The position numbers were made by a program, and so were the translations under genes. From positions 293,560 to 357,559 of IMG/VR virus record IMGVR_UViG_3300044701_000569: a stretch of 64,000 nt of DNA. The stretch is one strand, 5' to 3'. Shown in pieces: positions 22,994 to 63,424 of the stretch. Numbering within the stretch: position 1 is the first letter of the stretch; every line of letters starts with the position of its first letter. Under the pieces are notes generated by a model. That model was not told the origin of the DNA. It made no database searches and was given only the letters and a program-made list of their open reading frames with translations.

Positions 22994-23069
22994 TTTAAGG
23001 GCCTCAATAAAAAACTTTATGCTTATATGATAGCAGATTTAATTTCGTTGTCAACCACTAAATAATAGT

Positions 23070-23510
23070 ATGGAAGATGCTTACACTACAGCATTTTACG
23101 ATCTAGTCAAGGACACTCAAGAGCGTTCAGGTTTCGAATTGCCAGAACAGATTGAGGCGTATGTAGTCATGCTGTTGGCTAATTTTGTTGATCGTCCAAA
23201 CTTTCTCCCAACTCGATCATTTGCAGAAGCATACTTAAAACTTCATCGTCCTGCAGACCTGTCAGCTAAAGAACTAGGTGATACCTGTCTTTTTGTTACC
23301 GGTGTATTTCCTACCTACGGTTCAAACAGAGGCATGAATAGACGCTACTATCAAACTATTGGTATAGGATCTTATGAAATGGTCGCTGAAGTAATGCACA
23401 GAGATTTGTTTATCAATCTTGCAACCCACTTTGAGTTTATCAGCGACTTTATAGAATTAACTGTAAGGAATAAAAATCTAGGGGCCGTAACCCCTAGATT
23501 TGATTTATGA
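23070..23510 (+). CDS. hypothetical protein (late, possibly leaderless)
   Basis: TAAATA at 23059-23064, 5 nt before the ATG. Confidence 0.75.
   Translation: MEDAYTTAFYDLVKDTQERSGFELPEQIEAYVVMLLANFVDRPNFLPTRSFAEAYLKLHRPADLSAKELGDTCLFVTGVFPTYGSNRGMNRRYYQTIGIGSYEMVAEVMHRDLFINLATHFEFISDFIELTVRNKNLGAVTPRFDL
23473..23501. terminator. hairpin between convergent genes
   Basis: aaatctagggg-ccgtaa-cccctagattt. Confidence 0.65.
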
Positions 23511-24011
23511 ATTTAATACCTTAGCAACTGAATTCATAACACTAGCAATACGTCCAATGTCACGAAGCTGTTCAACTGTATAGCCTTCTGTCTTCAGTGT
23601 TTCATAATGTGCCTTAACACAGAAATGACACTTGCCTACAATACTGGCAGCAAGACTAAACGCTTCAAAGTTTGACTTAGTAGTTCCGCCATGACTAGCA
23701 ATAGCGTTCATGCGTAACTGTGCTGGCAATCCTTTCAGCGCAGGATCATCAGCCATCTCAACATAGGGGTACCAGGTATTGTTTTGGGCCATAGTTGATG
23801 CGGCTGTCATTGCTGACTCTGCGTATACTGGAGCATCTGCTAATAGTACAGCAAGTACTTTACCGTTGCCTGTTGAGGCAAGTGCGGCTACAGCACAACC
23901 CATAGCTACATCTGCATCTAGTGTACTACGCAATAGAACAGCGTCAAGATTTAACTTGGTGTCCTTTGCGTAGTCTGGCAACGCAGTTTTAATTGCGTCA
24001 ATGAATGCCAT
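23505..24011 (-). CDS. ahpD: alkyl hydroperoxidase D
   Basis: LPDYAKDTKLNL, MAQNNTWY, LRMN, GKCHFCVKAH. Confidence 0.93.
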   Translation of the reverse strand: MAFIDAIKTALPDYAKDTKLNLDAVLLRSTLDADVAMGCAVAALASTGNGKVLAVLLADAPVYAESAMTAASTMAQNNTWYPYVEMADDPALKGLPAQLRMNAIASHGGTTKSNFEAFSLAASIVGKCHFCVKAHYETLKTEGYTVEQLRDIGRIASVMNSVAKVLNS

Positions 24012-24544
24012 TACAGTGTCTCTCCGCCTACTGCACGATTACATGCACAAAGTTCACCAGTTTGTAGAGCGTCTAGTACACGCAGAGTTTCTTCTGGGCT
24101 ACGACCTACGTTCAAGTTGTTGACAGTAACGTGCTGGATAACATTGTTTGGGTCAACGATGAATGTAGCACGAAGTGCTGCGCCTGCTGGAGCGTAGAAT
24201 ACACCAAGTTGATTGATTAGGCTTAGTTCACCACGCTGTGTGTCTGCGAACTGTGTATGTGTAATCTTAGCAAGATCAGGATGTGCCTTCTGCCATGCTA
24301 GCTTGCAGAACTCATTGTCTGTGCTTCCTGTGAGCAATACTGCATCACGATCCTTAAAGTCGCCTGTTAGCTTGTCGTAAGCAACGATTTCTGTTGGGCA
24401 AACGAATGTAAAGTCCTTAGGGTAATATACAATTACCTTCCACTTGCCTTCAAATGACTCGTCTGTAATGTCAAAGAATTGATCACTACCTGGGTTTACG
24501 CCTGTAACGGCAAATGCTTCTAGCTTATCGCCAACTGTTTTCAT
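24011..24544 (-). CDS. ahpC: alkyl hydroperoxide reductase C (2-Cys peroxiredoxin)
   Basis: YPKDFTFVCPTE, ALRATFIVDP, VGRS, LCAC. Confidence 0.95.
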   Translation of the reverse strand: MKTVGDKLEAFAVTGVNPGSDQFFDITDESFEGKWKVIVYYPKDFTFVCPTEIVAYDKLTGDFKDRDAVLLTGSTDNEFCKLAWQKAHPDLAKITHTQFADTQRGELSLINQLGVFYAPAGAALRATFIVDPNNVIQHVTVNNLNVGRSPEETLRVLDALQTGELCACNRAVGGETL

Positions 24545-24601
24545 GTGTGTCTCCTTATGTTATGAAAAATACTCAGTAGAAGTTTGCTACTTCATTCATT
24601 A

Positions 24602-24630
24602 AGTATACATTTATTTACAATTAAAATCAA
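24602..24630 (-). promoter_or_regulatory. ahpC promoter TTGATT-N17-TATACT with internal TAAATA
   Basis: Read directly. Confidence 0.7.
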
Positions 24631-24650
24631 CTATTATTTGTGGATTTTTT

Positions 24651-24687
24651 ATTGTATTTTTCTATTACTGTAATTGATTAAACCAAT
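24651..24687. promoter_or_regulatory. putative OxyR binding site
   Basis: ATTG-N7-CTAT-N7-ATTG-N7-CAAT versus consensus ATAG-N7-CTAT-N7-ATAG-N7-CTAT, upstream of ahpC. Confidence 0.7.
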
Positions 24688-25292
24688 TACAGACTTAGAT
24701 CTAAAAGATGACGGCCTTCTCGTATTTCGCCTCTTACAAAAGAGTTGAAAGCCAATGTTGTTCGTGTATAATTGTTTCTTGTTGGTGCTACAGAATGTGT
24801 GATCTTGCTAGGAAATAAAACTATGTCTCCTGTATTTACAGGACAAGTTGCCATAGTAGTGTTCCATTGATTATCAGAACCTGCAGGTATATAAATCTGT
24901 TGAAACTCTTTCTTATGAAAGATTATTGCATCATAGTTTCTATTAGCATTTATATATAGACACCCAGATACTAAACTATTTTGATGCTGATGTTCGTGAA
25001 AATACTGTCCTGGGTCTAACCAACTTAACCAGCTTTGAGTAATTTCTATAGTTAAATTATTCTTTGGGGAATAAACCTTCTTAAGATAATTGTCTAGTTC
25101 ATTTTGAACTATGGTCCTAATATTAGTCATCTCTGGTCTATCCAAAACATATTGATCATCGCCCATAAGATTACCTATGTTCTGCATAGCAGTCGTTTTT
25201 TCATTATCAAAGAATTCGAGTTCGCCCTGATGGAAGTTTCTAGGCATTTGACTGATAGAAACAGCGGTTGGGAATATATCTACAATAGGCAT
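24687..25292 (-). CDS. 2OG-Fe(II) oxygenase (TIGR02466-like)
   Basis: HQHQNSLVSGCLY, LFPS..THSV, RTTLAFN. Confidence 0.85.
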   Translation of the reverse strand: MPIVDIFPTAVSISQMPRNFHQGELEFFDNEKTTAMQNIGNLMGDDQYVLDRPEMTNIRTIVQNELDNYLKKVYSPKNNLTIEITQSWLSWLDPGQYFHEHQHQNSLVSGCLYINANRNYDAIIFHKKEFQQIYIPAGSDNQWNTTMATCPVNTGDIVLFPSKITHSVAPTRNNYTRTTLAFNSFVRGEIREGRHLLDLSL

Positions 25293-25391
25293 GGTGTTCC
25301 TTACATTATAGTAGTAGTTATTGTTAACTGTCAGAATTTAAAGGTAAAAGTGGTAAATACATGTAGCGCAGAGCGTGAGGGGCATACAAAT

Positions 25392-25670
25392 ATGGAATTT
25401 CTAAAACTCGTGGGCGAGGTAGGGTTTCCGATTGCTGCTGCTATAGCAGCCGGTTATTTCGTCTTTTTAACAGTAAAATTTATTCTGCAGGGCGTAAACA
25501 GCAGTGTAAACGGATTAAAAAACATTATTAGTGCTCTGGACAATCGTGTCCAGACTATGAACAACGACCTAGTTAAGATTGATGCGCTGTTAAGCTACGT
25601 TATTGGTGTTAGACCTAACGTTGACAGACTAGCAGCTAACGAAGGCAAAGAGGATGCTAGGAGAGATTAA
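25392..25670 (+). CDS. YvrJ-like small membrane protein
   Basis: VGFPI motif, TM helix, coiled coil; GAGG SD and TAAATA upstream. Start reassigned from 25104. Confidence 0.75.
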   Translation: MEFLKLVGEVGFPIAAAIAAGYFVFLTVKFILQGVNSSVNGLKNIISALDNRVQTMNNDLVKIDALLSYVIGVRPNVDRLAANEGKEDARRD

Positions 25671-26014
25671 TGAATACCAATGAATTAGTACAAGCAATTA
25701 ATCAATACGGATTTCCTATTATAGCTGCAATGGGCTTAGGATACTTTGTATATTACATCTGGCAGTGGGCAACACAGGAAATTAAACCAGTGCTTGGGGA
25801 CGCAAGCTCAACCCTAATTAAACTTGTGGATCGTATTCGCATGTTAGACAATGACATGATACGTCTCAACACAAAACTATCAATGGTGCTAGAGTATCGT
25901 CAAGAAATTGAAGCCGCTGCTACACAAAAAGAAAAAGAAGACCTAGAAGAGCTATTGCACAAGTATAAGAGCTTCAGCAAAGGTTTTGATTCTACAGGTG
26001 ATGCTAAAAAATGA
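25670..26014 (+). CDS. YvrJ-like small membrane protein (paralogue of the previous gene)
   Basis: YGFPI...GYFV...DRIRMLDNDMIRL. Confidence 0.75.
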   Translation: MNTNELVQAINQYGFPIIAAMGLGYFVYYIWQWATQEIKPVLGDASSTLIKLVDRIRMLDNDMIRLNTKLSMVLEYRQEIEAAATQKEKEDLEELLHKYKSFSKGFDSTGDAKK

Positions 26015-26154: not shown

Positions 26155-26698
26155 TAATATCAATCACTGAATCACTGAGTACTACTTCATAGTGATTTAG
26201 CTCTACTTCTACCAGTTCCATATCTTCATGATGCTTCATGCTGTCAATAGTAACTACACCGTCGTTGGGTGCTATCATAAAAGGGCTTTGTCCTCGTAAC
26301 GTAACTACGTTAGTCCACGGATGTTGTATCTTAATTTTATCTGCTTGCCTCATGGGCCAACTGTTGGGACCTATGTCTCTCATTAGTCTAGAGAACGGTA
26401 AAAAATACTGTACATAATTTGCTACTTCTGCTCCGCCGTAGGGCGTACTAAGAGTCACAGCACCCAGCACTTGTTTAGGCATATGATTGGCTAGATGTAG
26501 AGAGTATATACCGCCTAAACTATGTGCTATAAAAAATATATCTTTTGTATTCATTAACGACAGTTTCATTGCAGCTAGATTATTTTCAAATCCGTCTCTA
26601 CTGTCGTAGTCAATGTCTATGCCCCTGCCTAGCTTGCTTCTAATATAATTAAAACTTTCGCTAGTAGCACTAGCACCATGTATGTAAACTAGGTTCAT
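26111..26698 (-). CDS. alpha/beta hydrolase (lipase/esterase-like)
   Basis: YIHG oxyanion segment, AHSLGG nucleophile, NDGVV, NHYEV. Confidence 0.88.
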   Translation of the reverse strand: MNLVYIHGASATSESFNYIRSKLGRGIDIDYDSRDGFENNLAAMKLSLMNTKDIFFIAHSLGGIYSLHLANHMPKQVLGAVTLSTPYGGAEVANYVQYFLPFSRLMRDIGPNSWPMRQADKIKIQHPWTNVVTLRGQSPFMIAPNDGVVTIDSMKHHEDMELVEVELNHYEVVLSDSVIDIIKTRLEACVTTLKQ

Positions 26699-28740
26699 TT
26701 CTCAGTTGCAATCCATTCGCCTTGCCAATCGTCACCTAGGTTCTGCTGTTTCATGAACTGGCAACGTTCAAACCAAATTTCGTAATACTTGTCCATTTGT
26801 CCATTAAATGTTCCCTTCATCATAGCACACATTTCAGCAGCTTCGTCAAACTTTTTCTGTTTGTACCAAGCATGCATGGCATTATGGGTATCACGATCCA
26901 TAATATATTCACGTTCGTTGCCCTTTATTCTCAGCACTGTGTATATGTTGTCAGCAACAGTTTTTCCTTTGGGCTGTAGGTTGTCTAGGTATAGATAGAA
27001 AAAGTCATCTTTGGTTCTGTTGTAGGTTTCAGCACCAATGATAGCCAACACACCATAGGCTTTGCAACGTGCTTCTAGTCGTGCAGCAGTACTAACCATG
27101 TCACCTAGTATGTCATAGCCGTGGCGTTCAGTTGATCCCATCTCACCTATAAATCCAGTGCCTGTGTTACAACCCCATCCCATAGCAGCAGGAGGTAAGC
27201 CCTGTGCTTCCATGTCTGCTGTATAACGATCCACAGCATCCAACATTTCTAGTCCTACCTTAACAATGGTGCGAGCATGATTAGGATCATCAATTGGAGC
27301 ACCATGCATGTGCATGCTAGCGTCACCTACATACTTAATAACCATACCTTTGTTGTTCATGATAGGTATAGTAATAGCATCCATATAGCCATTCATATAC
27401 TTGGCTAAGCCACCTACATCATCTCCATAGTGTTCACCAATTGGTGTGAAGCCACGTAGGTCTGAGAACATAACTGATACATCTTTACGCACACCTCGCT
27501 TGATAAGTTCTGGATCTTTCTGTAGCATCTCTACTACTTCCTTAGAGCAGTAGCCTGCAAACTGTTTCTTGATTGCCTGCTTCTGTAGGAATTCACTTAC
27601 AAACTTAATGCCATAAGTATGCAGAGCCACGAGTACAAAAGTAATCGTGCTTGCCGTCGCGTCTCCCAGGAAGGCTCCGTTATGGAAATAGTAATAAGAA
27701 GCAGCCACAGGGGTAATGATCCCCACAACAGTTGTAACGAGTCCGACATAAGTCCACCTTGATAGTAAAATTATTAGGGCACCTACTACAAGTATAAACA
27801 TGTATTCTGCGCTCTGTGCCCAGTCAGGACGCTGAATATTGCTGCCATTAAACATTGTTCCCAGCAGTGCTGCCTGCACATCTTGGGGATACACTGAACC
27901 CTTTGCTGTGGGTACAGGATTAGATAAGCCTGCGGCACTTACACCTACTATAACCACAGCACCATTAAAATCTTTGGGCAAATCAGCTGCACTAACACTC
28001 TTGTTAGTCTGACTCCAATCAACCCATACTCTACCATCTTGTTCTGTAGAGATAATACCAAATTTAGGTATTCTCAATTTTTCTACACCGTACTCGTTCA
28101 GTTTAATTTGAAAATTAGGATCACCTGCAATTACTCGTAGAGCTTCTAATGAAAGGCTGGGATACAGTACACCATCCACTGCTACCACAAGAGGTAATCT
28201 TCTGGTAACTCCGTCTATCTCAGTCATGGTGCTGACTATACCTACGCCCGCTGCATTCTTTTCCAGTGAAGGAACGTTTGCAATTATACCTTCTGCTGTG
28301 GGTATCTTGTGCAGGTACTCACTGCCCACAATAGCAGCGCCAGGATTCTTAGGTTGATTCTTTGTCTTATCGCTGGGTTGATTAGGTAGTATTACTGGTA
28401 GCTGTGCCAGTGTATTGGCTAAGAAAGCATCTCCGTTGAATCTGTCTTTCTCTGGCATCATCACGTTGAATATTACTAGTCCTGCGTTTCTAGCATACAG
28501 GTTGTGTATTAGTTCTGCATACACAGTTCTAGGAAAAGGCCACTGTCCCCATTTATCAAGTGATGCTTCATCTATGTTTACTGTATAGATATTGTTCTCT
28601 GTAGGTTCCTTAGAAGTAATAAGCCTGTCAAAGTAGTTTAACTTAACAGCTTCTAAGAATACAGGCTGCGACATAAACGTTGCCAGCAGTACGAATAGGG
28701 TTACAAATGCCCATAGTGGGTTGACAAATAGTTTCTTCAT
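26695..28740 (-). CDS. CHASE2-domain class III adenylate cyclase
   Basis: IDEASL..GQWPFPR, DGVTRR (CHASE2), three TM helices, FSDLRGFT, KYVGD, GDMVSTAARLE. Confidence 0.93.
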   Translation of the reverse strand: MKKLFVNPLWAFVTLFVLLATFMSQPVFLEAVKLNYFDRLITSKEPTENNIYTVNIDEASLDKWGQWPFPRTVYAELIHNLYARNAGLVIFNVMMPEKDRFNGDAFLANTLAQLPVILPNQPSDKTKNQPKNPGAAIVGSEYLHKIPTAEGIIANVPSLEKNAAGVGIVSTMTEIDGVTRRLPLVVAVDGVLYPSLSLEALRVIAGDPNFQIKLNEYGVEKLRIPKFGIISTEQDGRVWVDWSQTNKSVSAADLPKDFNGAVVIVGVSAAGLSNPVPTAKGSVYPQDVQAALLGTMFNGSNIQRPDWAQSAEYMFILVVGALIILLSRWTYVGLVTTVVGIITPVAASYYYFHNGAFLGDATASTITFVLVALHTYGIKFVSEFLQKQAIKKQFAGYCSKEVVEMLQKDPELIKRGVRKDVSVMFSDLRGFTPIGEHYGDDVGGLAKYMNGYMDAITIPIMNNKGMVIKYVGDASMHMHGAPIDDPNHARTIVKVGLEMLDAVDRYTADMEAQGLPPAAMGWGCNTGTGFIGEMGSTERHGYDILGDMVSTAARLEARCKAYGVLAIIGAETYNRTKDDFFYLYLDNLQPKGKTVADNIYTVLRIKGNEREYIMDRDTHNAMHAWYKQKKFDEAAEMCAMMKGTFNGQMDKYYEIWFERCQFMKQQNLGDDWQGEWIATEK

Positions 28741-41620: not shown

Positions 41621-41647
41621 AAAAAGAAAGGCGCCCTAGAGCGCCTT
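41621..41647 (-). terminator. intrinsic terminator ending the tmRNA transcript
   Basis: AAGGCGC-tctagg-GCGCCTT then TCTTTTT. Confidence 0.75.
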
Positions 41648-41999
41648 CCTCACTGTTCTGTTGCCCGGTAAGTGAACCGCGAACCTGCTGTTTCTTAGGC
41701 AGCTAGCGCAAAGTTGTTGTCATTGACAGCAACGTTTACGAATAGTTCAGGAGTAAAGGTTTTTGTGCCGTTTACTTGATTTTGCTTCTTTTACGGAGAT
41801 CGCCTACCGTGTTGCCGTCTCTACTATCTCACCCAATCGATCCTAGTTCAGCCCCATCATAAAAGGACAATTAGCATGACAGTTACAATGACTGTAAATC
41901 CTACTAAAAATCTTACTAGATCGTCTTCCATAACTATCCTTTTATGGTGGAGCTGGCGGGAGTTGCACCCGCGTCTTGAATGCCTTCGCTTTGAAGGGA
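41648..41999 (-). ncRNA. ssrA: circularly permuted (two-piece) tmRNA
   Basis: Acceptor piece ...GCGGGTGCAACTCCCGCCAGCTCCACCA ends at 41945 and precedes the coding piece, which starts GGGGCTG at 41855. G3:U70 pair present. Tag frame ends NDNNFALAA-TAA at 41695. Outer ends approximate. Confidence 0.92.
41857..41931 (-). CDS. putative 24-aa TM peptide inside the tmRNA intervening segment
   Basis: AAGGA SD, ATG, MEDDLVRFLVGFTVIVTVMLIVLL, TGA. Confidence 0.5.
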   Translation of the reverse strand: MEDDLVRFLVGFTVIVTVMLIVLL

Positions 42000-42012
42000 T
42001 TACAACAATTTC

Positions 42013-42216
42013 TTAAACAGGCTGAATGTTACTTGCCTGTTGTCCTTTTGGACCCATTGTGATTTCAAATCTTACACTCTGTCCTTCTTGTAGGCTTTTG
42101 TAGCCACTAGAAGAAATTTGTGAAAAATGAGCAAACACATCTGCGCCGCCATTGTCTGGAGTAATGAAACCAAAACCTTTAGCTTCGTTAAACCATTTTA
42201 CTTTACCTGTTACCAT
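42013..42216 (-). CDS. cspA: cold-shock protein
   Basis: GKVKWFN, KGFGFI (RNP1), VFAHFS (RNP2). Confidence 0.96.
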
Positions 42217-61573: not shown

Positions 61574-61612
61574 GCCCCTGGAGTAGCAGTACTTCAGGGG
61601 TTAATCTTTTTT
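61574..61612. terminator. terminator between convergent genes
   Basis: gcccctggagta-gcag-tacttcaggggt followed by a T-run. Confidence 0.7.
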
Positions 61613-63170
61613 AGAATATTAAAGCGTAGACGAAAAGATCATCTTGACTTATATTAGAAGCTAGGCGATTGTTTATATCTGTGAGATCACTAATATCTAC
61701 TGGAATAGTTGGCTTGTTTGTTAAGTCTGCGTAACTGCCAGAAAACAGTGTAGGCGTATCGCTAAGGTCGTTGTAACTTGTAACTAGTGTTGGTTTATTA
61801 GTTAGGTCTTCGTAGCTTCCTGAAAACAATGTTGGAAGTCCAGTTAAGTCGTCATAGCTGCCGCTGAACAATGTAGGAAGATCTGTTAAATCATTATAGC
61901 TGACAGTTGTTAAGTAACCTTGAGTTGTTACATAAGTTTCAGTAGCATATCCTGTTAGAGCAGAAATAGTAATAAATCCTGCGTTATTTGTTAAATCTCC
62001 GGTGTCCGAAGGTATTGTTGGTTTATTAGTTAGATCGTTGTAACTGCCGCTGAACAGAGTTGGTTTACCGCTCAACTGGTCATAAGTGATGTTAGGAATA
62101 TCTCTGCCATCAAAATTCAATCGTTTGCCTGTGCCAATGTTTGTCCAGTATTGAGTATTGCTTGTTGGCAAACTTTCGTTATCAAAGTTTGCAACATATA
62201 TGCTGCCATTATCATACACAGCATCCCCTGCAAGATAGCGTGTATTTTCTCCGCCAGGTAACAGTGTATGATTAGCGGTCCATTGCGGGGCAACTGCTAA
62301 CGAAGTTGGTTTATCAGTTAAGTCATTATAGCTGCCGCTGAACAGTGAAGGTAGGTCAGTCAACTGATTATAGCTAGTAACTCCTCCTGAAACTGTTACA
62401 CTTACAATTCCATCAGCATCAATTGTTAGACCAGAACCTATTTTAATTCCGCCCAGTATGCTGTTGGATGCTTTTGGTAAGCTATATCCTGCACCACTGG
62501 AAGAAAGAACATTGTTGTTATCACTAAGTTGGCTGATGTCAGTTGGTATAGTGGGTTTATCAGTCAGTTGAGTGTAACTTGTAATTAGGGTAGGTTTATT
62601 AGTTAGATCGTTGTAGCTTCCGCTGAATCCGTCTACAGTACCATCTGCATTTTTTGTTAGGCCTCGACCAATTTTAATTCCGCCTTTTACAGATCCACTA
62701 GCTTCCGGAACGTCAGTGATAAAACCTCTACCGTTTACAAATGATTCAGTAGCATATCCGGTTAATGCTGTATTTGTAATAAAACCAGCACTGTTTGTAA
62801 GCTGGCTGGTATTTGTTGGTACAGTTGGTTTATTTGTTAAGTCGTCGTAGTTGCCGCTGAATAGGGTTGGCTTGTTTGTTAAATCTGCGTAACTGCCGCT
62901 AAATCCGCTTATAACCTGATTGTTAATTCTAATAGTAGTGCCATCAACTTTAACACCACCTTTGGTTGTTGCCGATGCAGTGGGTAGTGTATAAGTTACT
63001 CCACCGCCTCCATCAGTGCCGCCTGTTGATAACGGAACACCACCAGGAGTTTCACCGTCAGACAGTCTTAGTACGCCGTCTGAAATATCAAAGAAAAGGT
63101 TTCCAACTTCGCCTACGAAAACGTCAATATCAGCATTGACCAAACCGGCTTTAATTTTACGAAACGCCAT
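61611..63170 (-). CDS. repeat-rich virion fibre protein
   Basis: About 13 (LF)SGSYxDLTxKPT repeats, three PxAS...GG(V/I)K repeats, internal W..RYLAGDAVYDNG.IY (CBM5/12-like). Confidence 0.8.
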   Translation of the reverse strand: MAFRKIKAGLVNADIDVFVGEVGNLFFDISDGVLRLSDGETPGGVPLSTGGTDGGGGVTYTLPTASATTKGGVKVDGTTIRINNQVISGFSGSYADLTNKPTLFSGNYDDLTNKPTVPTNTSQLTNSAGFITNTALTGYATESFVNGRGFITDVPEASGSVKGGIKIGRGLTKNADGTVDGFSGSYNDLTNKPTLITSYTQLTDKPTIPTDISQLSDNNNVLSSSGAGYSLPKASNSILGGIKIGSGLTIDADGIVSVTVSGGVTSYNQLTDLPSLFSGSYNDLTDKPTSLAVAPQWTANHTLLPGGENTRYLAGDAVYDNGSIYVANFDNESLPTSNTQYWTNIGTGKRLNFDGRDIPNITYDQLSGKPTLFSGSYNDLTNKPTIPSDTGDLTNNAGFITISALTGYATETYVTTQGYLTTVSYNDLTDLPTLFSGSYDDLTGLPTLFSGSYEDLTNKPTLVTSYNDLSDTPTLFSGSYADLTNKPTIPVDISDLTDINNRLASNISQDDLFVYALIF

Positions 63171-63199
63171 CCCTTAGCCCCCTATACGATATTTATCGG

Positions 63200-63424
63200 T
63201 TACTGTTTAGGAATTGGTTTCTCGTCTTGTGTTAGTTTTTGTATTACAGGACTGATTTTGCCTTGATCAGCTTTCTTTAATTCAATGTCTTGCTGAAGTG
63301 GAGGAACAAACACTGGATTCTGATCAAAGTCTTTTGGATCTTTTGGTGGCAGTTCGTTAGAAGACTCGCCGTCTAGCTTGTCAATAATATCGGCCAAAGC
63401 CCTCATAAATTCTGCTGCTCTCAT
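63200..63424 (-). CDS. hypothetical late protein
   Basis: MRAAEF, FVPPLQQ; TAAATA 5 nt before the ATG. Confidence 0.75.
   Translation of the reverse strand: MRAAEFMRALADIIDKLDGESSNELPPKDPKDFDQNPVFVPPLQQDIELKKADQGKISPVIQKLTQDEKPIPKQ

What the first reader, a model, noticed from the sequence alone, without database searches (positions are those of the whole stretch)
23505..24687. Phage ahpC-ahpD operon retains an OxyR-type operator
Seen: ATTG-N7-CTAT-N7-ATTG-N7-CAAT (24651-24687; 13 of 16 consensus positions, exact spacing) 20 bp upstream of a TTGATT-N17-TATACT promoter that also contains TAAATA. Known: oxidised OxyR binds four ATAG-type tetrads at this spacing and activates ahpC. Inference: a lytic phage wires its peroxide defence to the host redox sensor, with a late-promoter override.
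Basis: partly seen in the sequence, partly recalled or inferred. Interest (0 to 1): 0.65.

Follow-up and report, generated by a model that had tools for sequence, protein, structure and literature searches.

The report
OxyR-type operator on phage ahpCD
A 358-kb freshwater phage carries a peroxide-detoxifying ahpC-ahpD operon with its own promoter, and upstream sits a four-part DNA site that is conserved in related phages and looks like the binding site of the bacterial peroxide sensor OxyR, so the phage probably lets its host's stress sensor control this gene.

Summary
On the gene's strand, ATTG-N7-CAAT-N7-ATAG-N7-CAAT lies at 24687-24651. It ends 20 nt upstream of TTGATT-N17-TATACT, which precedes ahpC and ahpD.

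A 13/16 match is not rare across 64 kb (expected 0.42). It is rare in this 146-nt spacer (P about 0.001), and it is the best of the genome's 134 intergenic regions.

Comparative evidence is stronger:
- 37 distinct upstream regions from related viral contigs align without gaps over the element. The tetrads are near-invariant while the N7 spacers vary.
- A three-tetrad pattern occurs 52 times in 466 kb of those loci, 45 of them at ahpC.
- The closest cellular ahpCD operons (Burkholderiales) show the same layout.
- The window-type pattern marks oxyR/cytochrome c peroxidase and rubrerythrin promoters in that order, with zero control hits.
- The same cassette drives a different peroxiredoxin in other phages.
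- The phage encodes no LysR regulator, and its tmRNA is of the betaproteobacterial type.

The most likely reading is a host-OxyR operator inside a mobile promoter cassette. Binding and peroxide induction are untested, and the host is unknown.

The "late-promoter override" is weak: TAAATA is present but atypical in context and distance. "Lytic" is only consistent with the absence of an integrase.

The parts
24651..24687 (-). Four-tetrad operator, ATTG-N7-CAAT-N7-ATAG-N7-CAAT on the gene strand. It consists of two ATWG-N7-CWAT dyads with centres 22 bp apart. Its first base is the last base of the upstream gene's stop codon.
   Evidence: It aligns with columns 6-42 of the 37-sequence cassette alignment.
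24670..24690 (.). Perfect inverted repeat GTAATTG-N7-CAATTAC that contains dyad 1. In the near-identical relative L002/L166 the 7-nt centre is inverted while the arms are kept.
24631..24650 (-). A-rich 20-nt stretch between the operator and the -35. In relatives it corresponds to the A-run plus a further CTAT tetrad, which is degenerate here (CCAC). It may act as an UP-like element.
24602..24630 (-). Sigma-70-type promoter TTGATT-N17-TATACT.
   Evidence: 9 of 12 matches. The same layout is conserved in relatives.
24612..24617 (-). TAAATA hexamer inside the promoter spacer. It is a candidate phage-type promoter core, but atypical.
24572..24593 (-). Predicted 5'-UTR stem-loop immediately after the expected start site (about 24595). 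Relatives keep a hairpin here with at least eight different stem sequences.
24551..24556 (-). Shine-Dalgarno AAGGAG, 6 nt before the ATG.
24011..24544 (-). ahpC: 177-aa peroxiredoxin with FVCPTE and a C-terminal C-A-C.
   Evidence: AhpC-TSA, 2.9e-21; TIGR03137, 114.6 bits.
23505..24011 (-). ahpD: 168-aa AhpD/CMD-family protein with C-H-F-C followed by His. Its start overlaps the ahpC stop (TAATG).
   Evidence: CMD; TIGR00777, 113.6 bits.
23474..23501 (-). Intrinsic terminator after ahpD, shared with the convergent gene at 23070-23510.
24687..25292 (-). Upstream neighbour, a 2OG-Fe(II) oxygenase. It is not part of the cassette: it adjoins ahpC in only 1 of 80 related loci.

Best explanation
The 37-bp element is a genuine LysR-type operator, most likely for the host's peroxide sensor OxyR. 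It belongs to a self-contained expression cassette: operator, sigma-70 promoter, 5' stem-loop, strong ribosome-binding site, ahpC, translationally coupled ahpD, and terminator. This cassette circulates among a large group of freshwater phages.

Proposed mechanism (inferred): an OxyR tetramer occupies the two contiguous ATWG-N7-CWAT dyads, about -92 to -56 from the predicted start site. Its proximal dimer is centred near -63, on the face of the helix used by upstream activators that contact the RNA polymerase alpha subunit. When oxidised by H2O2 it raises transcription from a promoter that is already fairly good.

The phage-made AhpC then reduces peroxides and is recycled by AhpD, using host lipoamide-linked reductant.

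Shown here: the sequence, its conservation, its specificity to ahpC, and its likeness to bacterial OxyR-regulon sites. Inferred: who binds, the direction of control, and the benefit to the phage.
For: 1. Conservation. 37 distinct cassette-bearing upstream regions align gap-free over 58 columns. T2 is C(37/37)-W-A(37/37)-T(36/37). T3 starts with A-T in 37/37. T1 has A-T-T in 31-35 of 37. The N7 spacers vary, for example ATTTTTC against AAAAAAC. Dyad 1 matches ATWG-N7-CWAT at 7 or more of 8 positions in 35/37.

2. Specificity. ATWR-N7-CWAT-N7-ATWR occurs 52 times in 466 kb of related loci, 45 of them at the ahpC upstream site in 38 loci. In the 357-kb genome the ahpC spacer is the best of 134 intergenic regions, P = 0.00135.

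3. The flanks upstream of the cassette differ between loci: different terminators and genes, and the 2OG oxygenase neighbour in 1 of 80. ahpD follows in 79 of 80.

4. The nearest cellular AhpC proteins (62-71% identity; Cupriavidus, Collimonas, Oligella, Pelistega, Undibacterium) have four tetrads with ATAG-AAATATW-CWAT next to the -35, then a hairpin. A profile of the phage cassette hits those sites and nothing in shuffled controls.

5. The window-type pattern, with up to 1 mismatch, hits 7 of 401 genomes of that order against 0 for the reversed control. Three hits lie between a LysR gene whose best match is OxyR (224-229 bits) and a di-haem peroxidase gene, and one lies next to rubrerythrin.

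6. Published OxyR half-sites include ATTG-N7-CTAT and ATAG-N7-CAAT forms, are A+T rich and follow T-N11-A (PMC3378865). [quoted passage not shown]

7. In viral contigs the exact pattern occurs in 34 stretches, against 0 when the spacing is changed to N9/N5. Downstream genes include AhpC, a Prx5-like peroxiredoxin driven by the same cassette (3 loci) and a thioredoxin.

8. No LysR HTH is encoded in the phage genome. The phage tmRNA matches beta_tmRNA.
Against:
- The host is unknown.
- The site ends 20 nt upstream of the -35, whereas in the bacterial ahpCD promoters the fourth tetrad abuts it.
- The promoter (9/12) may not need an activator.
- T4 is poorly conserved across cassettes. Only 8 of 37 have a good contiguous second dyad; 13 of 37 have it 34 bp from the first instead.
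- About a third of related loci lack the cassette altogether.
- The aligned sequences share ancestry, so the counts are not independent.
- ORFs flanking strict 16/16 consensus sites in viral contigs show no general enrichment for antioxidant genes (1 of 41).
- Similarity between phage and bacterial operators is weak (best E = 0.011).
- In B. thailandensis OxyR was reported to repress ahpC, so the sign of control is open.
Confidence: 0.6

Rival explanations
1. The dyads are an operator for some other DNA-binding protein: another host LysR-type regulator, or a phage-encoded factor of a different fold. The resemblance to OxyR sites is then a family trait of LysR boxes.
For: T-N11-A dyads are generic for LysR-type regulators. 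About 20 other phage promoters carry near-perfect four-tetrad elements upstream of genes unrelated to redox, such as HAD-like, HNH and GcrA-like genes. Strict-consensus sites in phages are not enriched for antioxidant genes.
Against: The tetrads are ATAG/CTAT-like at N7 spacing, which is the OxyR signature rather than that of other described LysR boxes (established knowledge). The same pattern sits at oxyR-linked promoters in Burkholderiales. The regulated genes are two peroxiredoxin families and a thioredoxin. No LysR HTH is encoded in the phage genome.
Confidence: 0.18
2. There is no specific regulator. The conserved A/T-rich blocks act as an UP element or as phased A-tracts that bend DNA and strengthen a constitutive promoter, and the tetrad match is a by-product of A/T richness and shared ancestry.
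For: The region is 77% A+T. The A-runs (columns 32-36 and 45-49) are as conserved as the tetrads. The promoter has good hexamers. A 13/16 match is expected 0.42 times per 64 kb.
Against: The invariant C of T2 (37/37) and the strict N7 register, kept while spacers flip between T-runs and A-runs, are not what bending alone requires. The local P is 0.00135. Changing the spacing removes all 34 viral matches. The link to ahpC is specific.
Confidence: 0.12
3. The inverted repeat GTAATTG-N7-CAATTAC at the upstream gene's stop codon is a transcription terminator or RNA hairpin for the 2OG oxygenase gene, not an operator.
For: It is a perfect 7-bp inverted repeat overlapping the stop codon.
Against: It is an all-A/T-rich stem with no T-run after it, and the terminator scan does not call it. 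In most relatives dyad 1 is not a perfect palindrome and lies just downstream of a separate G+C-rich terminator hairpin.
Confidence: 0.03
4. One reading: the TAAATA in the spacer is a second, phage-specific (T4-late-like) promoter that expresses ahpCD regardless of OxyR.
For: TAAATA-containing 8-mers are 6-10 times enriched in intergenic DNA. About 38 copies lie 13-31 nt upstream of start codons, including a tail-fibre-like gene. The hexamer holds a fixed spacer position in about 18 of 27 long cassettes. Some relatives without the operator have CTAAATA or GTAAATA upstream of ahpC.
Against: The ahpC copy is 67 nt from the ATG, against a mode of 18. It is preceded by G, the rarest base at that position. 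The 8-mer is not TATAAATA. The hexamer occurs 269 times in the genome. The motif also precedes the ribonucleotide reductase gene, so 'late' is unproven. No sigma region 2 match was found in the genome.
Confidence: 0.15

Closest known systems
OxyR operators of Proteobacteria (E. coli oxyS/katG/ahpC; P. aeruginosa ChIP-defined sites)
   Same: Four ATAG-type tetrads in an 11-bp register, T-N11-A dyads, very A+T rich, upstream of a peroxidase gene. Half-sites such as ATTG-N7-CTAT and ATAG-N7-CAAT occur among bound P. aeruginosa sites.
   Different: The element is carried on a phage genome. It is 20 nt away from the -35 instead of abutting it. The promoter hexamers are good. Binding is untested.
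ahpC-ahpD promoters of Burkholderiales (OxyR binds the B. thailandensis ahpC promoter, PMC6626918)
   Same: Same gene pair: a three-Cys AhpC and a CxxC AhpD. Four tetrads with an ATAG-A/T-rich-CWAT proximal dyad, and a 5' hairpin after the -10.
   Different: 62-71% protein identity only. In the bacteria T4 abuts a TAGACA-like -35. Operator similarity is weak by profile (E = 0.011). In B. thailandensis OxyR was reported as a repressor.
Phage auxiliary genes driven by host regulators (cyanophage pstS/phoA with Pho boxes; NtcA sites in cyanophage promoters; from my own knowledge, not checked here)
   Same: A host-derived metabolic or stress gene on a phage genome keeps a binding site for the host's sensor-regulator, so expression follows the state of the host.
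   Different: Different regulator, stress and hosts. Here the operator travels with the gene as a mobile cassette, in two architectures.
OxyR acting at phage promoters: Mu mom (own knowledge), lambda pM-pR (PMC2903704), Pf4 (PMC12395586, PMC3378865), P22-like gtr operons (PMC3688519); seen in the lists
   Same: Host OxyR binds phage DNA and changes phage gene expression.
   Different: Those are temperate or filamentous phages, and the targets are lysogeny, modification or conversion genes. None is a peroxidase operon of a jumbo phage.

Membership tests
OxyR binding site | Four ATAG/CTAT-type tetrads, each separated by 7 nt | tested here: met
   13 of 16 strict, 16 of 16 as ATWG/CWAT, exact spacing.
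OxyR binding site | T-N11-A dyad symmetry typical of LysR-type boxes, with an A+T-rich centre | tested here: met
   Both dyads have T at position 2 and A at position 14, and their spacers are A/T rich (description).
OxyR binding site | Placed upstream of, and in helical phase with, the promoter of an oxidative-stress gene | tested here: inconclusive
   It lies upstream of the ahpC promoter, but 20 nt from the -35. Relatives have gaps of 0, 8-11 or 20-22 nt. Bacterial ahpCD sites abut the -35.
OxyR binding site | Under selection: conserved in relatives beyond the neighbouring sequence | tested here: met
   Tetrad columns are near-invariant and spacers variable in 37 sequences. 45 of 52 pattern hits are at ahpC.
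OxyR binding site | The same motif is found at other members of the OxyR regulon in the candidate host lineage | tested here: met
   7 of 401 Burkholderiales-order genomes hit, 0 in the control. The hits include oxyR/di-haem peroxidase divergent promoters (3) and rubrerythrin (1). The true host is unknown.
OxyR binding site | Bound by OxyR; peroxide- and oxyR-dependent transcription | not testable with these tools
   Needs EMSA or footprinting and reporters.
AhpC/AhpD alkyl hydroperoxide reductase (mycobacterial/Burkholderia type) | AhpC: peroxiredoxin fold with a peroxidatic Cys in an FVCPTE-like motif and two C-terminal resolving Cys | tested here: met
   AhpC-TSA 2.9e-21. FVCPTE and C-A-C are seen in the translation. 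TIGR03137 scores 114.6 bits, below its 272-bit equivalog cut-off.
AhpC/AhpD alkyl hydroperoxide reductase (mycobacterial/Burkholderia type) | AhpD: CMD fold with CxxC and a nearby His, encoded directly after ahpC | tested here: met
   CMD 2.2e-09. TIGR00777 scores 113.6 bits (cut-off 191.95) and the ahpD core domain 29.4 bits, over its cut-off. C-H-F-C-V-K-A-H is present. The stop and start overlap.
AhpC/AhpD alkyl hydroperoxide reductase (mycobacterial/Burkholderia type) | Peroxidase activity, with AhpD recycled by lipoamide-linked host enzymes | not testable with these tools
   Biochemical assay needed.
T4-type late promoter | TATAAATA-like octamer at about -10 of a start site close to the gene | tested here: not met
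   The octamer here is TGTAAATA, 67 nt from the ATG. The genome's typical copies lie 13-31 nt away and are preceded by A.
T4-type late promoter | Phage-encoded late sigma factor | tested here: inconclusive
   There is no Sigma70_r2 match in the genome, but T4 gp55-like proteins are too divergent for this to count as absence.
Intrinsic terminator (for the inverted repeat at 24670-24690) | G+C-rich stem followed by a T-run | tested here: not met
   A/T-rich stem, no T-run, not reported by the scan.

The most novel reading that the evidence does not exclude
A mobile, peroxide-responsive expression cassette is shared by hundreds of freshwater phage genomes and is swapped between peroxidase genes (AhpC/AhpD, Prx5-like). 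The cassette comprises an OxyR-type operator, a sigma-70 promoter, a 5' stabilising hairpin and a ribosome-binding site.

It comes in two operator architectures. In one the dyads are contiguous (centres 22 bp apart, as in this window). In the other they are split (34 bp apart, with the second dyad at or on the -35). These mirror the oxidised and reduced footprints of OxyR, so different phages may have chosen activation or repression-plus-derepression by the host sensor.

More broadly, near-perfect four-tetrad elements next to weak -35 boxes upstream of unrelated phage genes, and 22-bp tandem arrays of the dyad in another jumbo phage, would mean that phages use, or titrate, OxyR far more widely than is known.
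Probability: 0.3. Interest if true: 0.75.

Novelty: new variant of a known kind. Interest (0 to 1): 0.6.

Why it matters
If host OxyR drives this operon, the phage does not merely carry an antioxidant gene. It makes that gene's expression depend on the redox state of the infected cell, through the host's own sensor. This is the oxidative-stress counterpart of the phosphate- and nitrogen-sensing control known for cyanophage auxiliary genes.

AhpC relatives were found on at least 599 viral contigs. About half of the 80 loci examined carry the operator cassette, so the arrangement would be common in lakes, where H2O2 follows a daily cycle.

It is directly testable with a 150-bp fragment and a surrogate host. 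It also offers a compact, portable peroxide-responsive promoter module.

Tried and rejected
- Window-wide significance of the 13/16 match: not significant. The claim rests on location and conservation instead.
- Rfam search of 23000-26000 for a known leader or RNA motif: nothing.
- Host assignment by BLAST of the phage tmRNA against 401 genomes of the Oligella order: only short matches to the conserved tRNA-like part, so uninformative.
- Similar DNA in the phage collection: only weak matches to Methylophilales phage Melnitz for neighbouring ORFs, and to a Ralstonia 'phage' record for ahpC. The closest rIIA is in PA5oct-like Pseudomonas jumbo phages at 30% identity.
- A general redox 'regulon' around strict 16/16 OxyR-consensus sites in viral contigs: rejected. 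Only 1 of 41 flanking ORFs (a thioredoxin) is antioxidant, and 24 loci are tandem arrays.
- A strict regular expression for the full bacterial promoter layout matched only 4 of 73 bacterial loci. The wider similarity was judged.
- IHF and PerR/Fur-type boxes were considered by eye and dropped, because the candidate matches are not conserved across cassettes.
- One Pfam call failed on a wrong frame and was repeated correctly.
- The large protein searches, structure prediction and complex prediction were not used. The proteins are clearly assigned and the question concerns DNA.
Full report
WHAT IS THERE

The window is the last 64 kb of a 357,559-bp virus record that CheckV rates as complete. It has about 39% G+C, and nearly all genes are on the minus strand. 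It encodes rIIA, a class I ribonucleotide reductase and a tail-fibre-like protein. No tyrosine integrase was found.

On the minus strand lie three genes:
- 24687-25292 is a 2OG-Fe(II) oxygenase.
- 24011-24544 is a 177-aa AhpC/TSA peroxiredoxin.
- 23505-24011 is a 168-aa AhpD/CMD-family protein.

AhpC has the FVCPTE peroxidatic motif and a C-terminal Cys-Ala-Cys. AhpD has Cys-His-Phe-Cys followed by a His. The two genes overlap by one base (TAATG) and end at an intrinsic terminator at 23501-23474.

THE OBSERVATION

In the 142-nt spacer before ahpC, the gene strand reads as follows:
- ATTG (24687-24684), N7, CAAT (24676-24673), N7, ATAG (24665-24662), N7, CAAT (24654-24651).
- 20 A-rich bases.
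- TTGATT (24630-24625), then a 17-nt spacer that contains TAAATA (24617-24612), then TATACT (24607-24602).
- A short stem-loop (24593-24572) and AAGGAG (24556-24551).

As a search over the whole window the 13/16 match is unremarkable: 1 found against 0.42 expected. Three other measures point the other way:
- Only two sites in the 357-kb genome reach 13/16.
- This spacer scores highest of 134 intergenic regions.
- Dinucleotide shuffles of the spacer reach 13/16 in 0.135% of 20,000 trials.

CONSERVATION AND SPECIFICITY

AhpC relatives (85-100% identity among the 80 loci kept) occur on at least 599 viral contigs. ahpD follows in 79 of the 80.

Of 67 distinct upstream regions, about 45 share a recognisable cassette although the DNA further upstream differs. 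The upstream DNA shows different terminators and genes, and the 2OG oxygenase is the neighbour in 1 of 80 loci.

Thirty-seven distinct cassettes align without a gap over 58 columns:
- The second tetrad is C (37/37), T/A, A (37/37), T (36/37).
- The third tetrad begins A-T in 37/37.
- The first tetrad has A-T-T in 31-35 of 37.
- The 7-nt spacers vary freely and even switch between a T-run and an A-run.

The first dyad fits ATWG-N7-CWAT at 7 or more of 8 positions in 35 of 37 cassettes. A second good dyad lies in one of two places:
- Contiguous with the first, centres 22 bp apart, in 8 cassettes including the window.
- 34 bp from the first, at or on the -35, in 13 cassettes.

A three-tetrad pattern occurs 52 times in 466 kb of these loci, 45 times at the ahpC site. 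The specific ATAG-A-rich-CAAT dyad occurs once in the whole genome.

These sequences are related by descent, so the counts are not independent. Even so, fixed tetrads with drifting spacers are what a protein-binding site predicts.

WHO BINDS

The phage genome has no LysR-type HTH, so a host factor is the simplest candidate. Six lines of evidence point to OxyR.

1. The geometry is the OxyR one: four ATAG-type elements in an 11-bp register, T-N11-A, very A+T rich. ChIP-defined P. aeruginosa sites include ATTG-N7-CTAT and ATAG-N7-CAAT forms (PMC3378865).

2. The nearest cellular AhpC proteins (62-71% identity) are from Burkholderiales and some Alphaproteobacteria. Three still closer 'MAG' hits look like mis-binned phage contigs. 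Upstream of those bacterial ahpC genes there are four tetrads with an ATAG-AAATATW-CWAT proximal dyad next to a TAGACA-like -35. An ATAG follows just before the -10, and then a hairpin.

3. A profile built from the phage cassettes finds those bacterial sites: best E = 0.011, 26 hits below E = 10, none in shuffled controls. In whole 6.5-kb loci the top hits fall at the same place.

4. OxyR binds the ahpC promoter of Burkholderia thailandensis, whose AhpC is also recycled by AhpD (PMC6626918).

5. The window-type pattern ATWG-N7-CWAT-N7-ATAG-RAAAWWW-CWAT, with at most one mismatch, hits 7 of 401 genomes of the Oligella order. The reversed control hits none. Three hits lie between a LysR gene whose best family match is OxyR (224-229 bits, below the equivalog cut-off of 329 but far above any other family) and a divergent di-haem cytochrome c peroxidase/MauG-family gene. 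One lies next to rubrerythrin.

6. In the viral collection the exact pattern occurs in 34 stretches, and in none when the spacing is changed to N9/N5. The genes downstream include AhpC and a thioredoxin on a 28% G+C contig. They also include, in three loci, a Prx5-like Redoxin peroxiredoxin behind what is plainly the same cassette, with the same -35, spacer, hairpin and ribosome-binding site. The module therefore follows peroxidase function rather than one gene.

The phage also carries a permuted tmRNA that matches Rfam beta_tmRNA (108 bits against a gathering score of 84). This fits a betaproteobacterial host or donor.

HOW IT PROBABLY WORKS (INFERENCE)

With a start site near 24595, the operator spans about -92 to -56 and the proximal dyad is centred near -63. 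An OxyR tetramer on four successive major grooves would sit one to two helical turns upstream of RNA polymerase. In that position it can contact the alpha C-terminal domain. The A-rich 20 nt between could add UP-element-like contacts.

Because the hexamers are fairly good (9/12), I expect basal expression that is raised under peroxide stress.

Cassettes with the split dyads, whose distal half reaches the -35, could instead be held down by reduced OxyR and released on oxidation. This resembles the two footprints described for E. coli OxyR (established knowledge, not tested here).

The gap between T4 and the -35 takes values near 0, 8-11 and 20-22 nt across cassettes. That is roughly whole helical turns, which suits a face-of-helix-dependent activator.

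WHAT SPEAKS AGAINST, AND WHAT IS OPEN

- The host is unknown.
- The fourth tetrad is weakly conserved.
- A third of the relatives express ahpC without the cassette, some behind a CTAAATA-type motif or directly after another gene.
- Sites matching the strict 16/16 consensus in viral contigs are not enriched for antioxidant genes: 1 of 41 flanking ORFs, and 24 loci are tandem arrays. The redox link therefore rests on this cassette family plus one thioredoxin, not on a general phage 'OxyR regulon'.
- 'Retained from the host' is plausible from the shared layout, but the operator-level similarity is weak.

THE LATE-PROMOTER IDEA

TAAATA-containing 8-mers (ACTAAATA, GATAAATA) are 8-10 times enriched in intergenic DNA. 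About 38 copies lie 13-31 nt upstream of start codons, 11 of them at exactly 18 nt, and most are preceded by A. One precedes the tail-fibre-like gene, but another precedes the ribonucleotide reductase gene. The genome therefore does seem to have a phage-type promoter class, though not necessarily a 'late' one.

The ahpC copy is 67 nt from the ATG and preceded by G. The hexamer alone occurs 269 times in the genome. It does hold a fixed place in the spacer of about two thirds of the long cassettes. I rate an independent promoter there at about 15%.

COMPARISON AND NOVELTY

The parts are known. They are OxyR operators, ahpC-ahpD operons, phage auxiliary genes under host regulators (Pho boxes and NtcA sites in cyanophages, from my own knowledge), and OxyR acting on Mu, lambda, Pf4 and P22-like phages.

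Four full-text searches found no report of an OxyR-type operator on a phage-borne peroxidase operon. I therefore class it as a new variant of a known kind: a host redox-sensor site built into a mobile phage cassette, widespread in freshwater viromes and occurring in two architectures.

My confidence is about 0.8 that it is a functional protein-binding operator and about 0.6 that the protein is host OxyR.

Noticed in passing
window 41625-42070 (-): The phage encodes a permuted (two-piece) tmRNA. ARAGORN gives the tag peptide VAVNDNNFALAA. Rfam matches tmRNA_permuted (127 bits) and beta_tmRNA (108 bits, gathering score 84). This hints at a betaproteobacterial host or donor. An Oligella genome has the same family at 158 bits.
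   Followed up: partly
window 24572-24593 (-), and the matching place in L004-L081: There is a stem-loop of 5-8 bp right after the predicted start site. It is kept in most cassettes with at least eight different stem sequences (CAGTA/ACTG, AGAAC/GTTCT, ACAAC/GTTGT, AGGAC/GTCCT and others), so the structure rather than the sequence is conserved. Bacterial ahpCD leaders in Oligella and Pelistega also start with a hairpin. It is probably an mRNA-stabilising 5' hairpin. No Rfam family matches.
   Followed up: partly
whole genome G000; e.g. window 63171-63200 upstream of 61611-63170: There are two intergenic motif classes. One is TAAATA preceded mostly by GA/CA, 13-31 nt (mode 18) before start codons, which looks like a phage-specific promoter class. 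The other is an extended -35, GGTTGACAA, with TATAAT-type -10 boxes.
   Followed up: partly
L170:9503-9539, L178:7928-7964, L194:8276-8312: Other viral contigs use the same operator-promoter-hairpin-RBS cassette to drive a Prx5-like Redoxin peroxiredoxin (176-178 aa) instead of AhpC.
   Followed up: partly
L172, L174, L169, L185, L173, L179, L192, L195, L180, L190 and others (sites listed): About 20 viral contigs (36-60% G+C) carry perfect or near-perfect four-tetrad elements with a G+C-rich centre (CTAT-CGGGCCG-ATAG). The last tetrad abuts a weak -35, and TATAAT lies 23-31 nt further on. They sit upstream of genes with no obvious redox role: a 160-aa unknown, HAD-like, GcrA-like and HNH genes. 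Several genes in one phage group share the element. The binding protein and purpose are unknown.
   Followed up: partly
L275:34-290, 719-780, 1127-1190 (contig of 330,873 bp); also L238, L223: There are tandem arrays of a 22-bp unit, ATAG-N7-CTAT-N7 (about 13 copies in L275), in another jumbo-phage contig. They could be iterons, a centromere-like site, or a sink for an OxyR-like protein. Not examined further.
   Followed up: no
L002:2338-3290 and many of L003-L081: In more than half of the related loci ahpC and ahpD are separated by 200-2,900 nt of inserted DNA. In L002 (AhpC 100% identical to the window) the insert encodes a NUMOD3-motif protein, which suggests a homing endonuclease.
   Followed up: partly
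window 24677-24683 against L002/L166: Between the window and its near-identical relative, the 7-nt centre of dyad 1 is inverted (GTTTAAT against ATTAAAC) while the inverted-repeat arms are unchanged. This looks like a flip between the arms that leaves the tetrads intact.
   Followed up: no
window 26695-28740 (-): A 681-aa CHASE2 sensor domain is fused to an adenylate/guanylate cyclase domain. It matches a phage protein family over its full length (phrog_35576, 614 bits), so this is a phage-borne cyclic-nucleotide signalling protein.
   Followed up: no
L082, L083, L084, L125 (genome contigs): MAG contigs labelled Haliscomenobacter, Alphaproteobacteria, Fischerella and Bacteroidota carry the phage-type AhpC (76-85% identity). 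L082 also carries the phage cassette. They are probably phage contigs binned into bacterial MAGs.
   Followed up: partly
L189:2716-2752: In a prophage region of an isolate genome, the four-tetrad pattern lies between a holin gene and an MsrP-like molybdopterin oxidoreductase gene.
   Followed up: no
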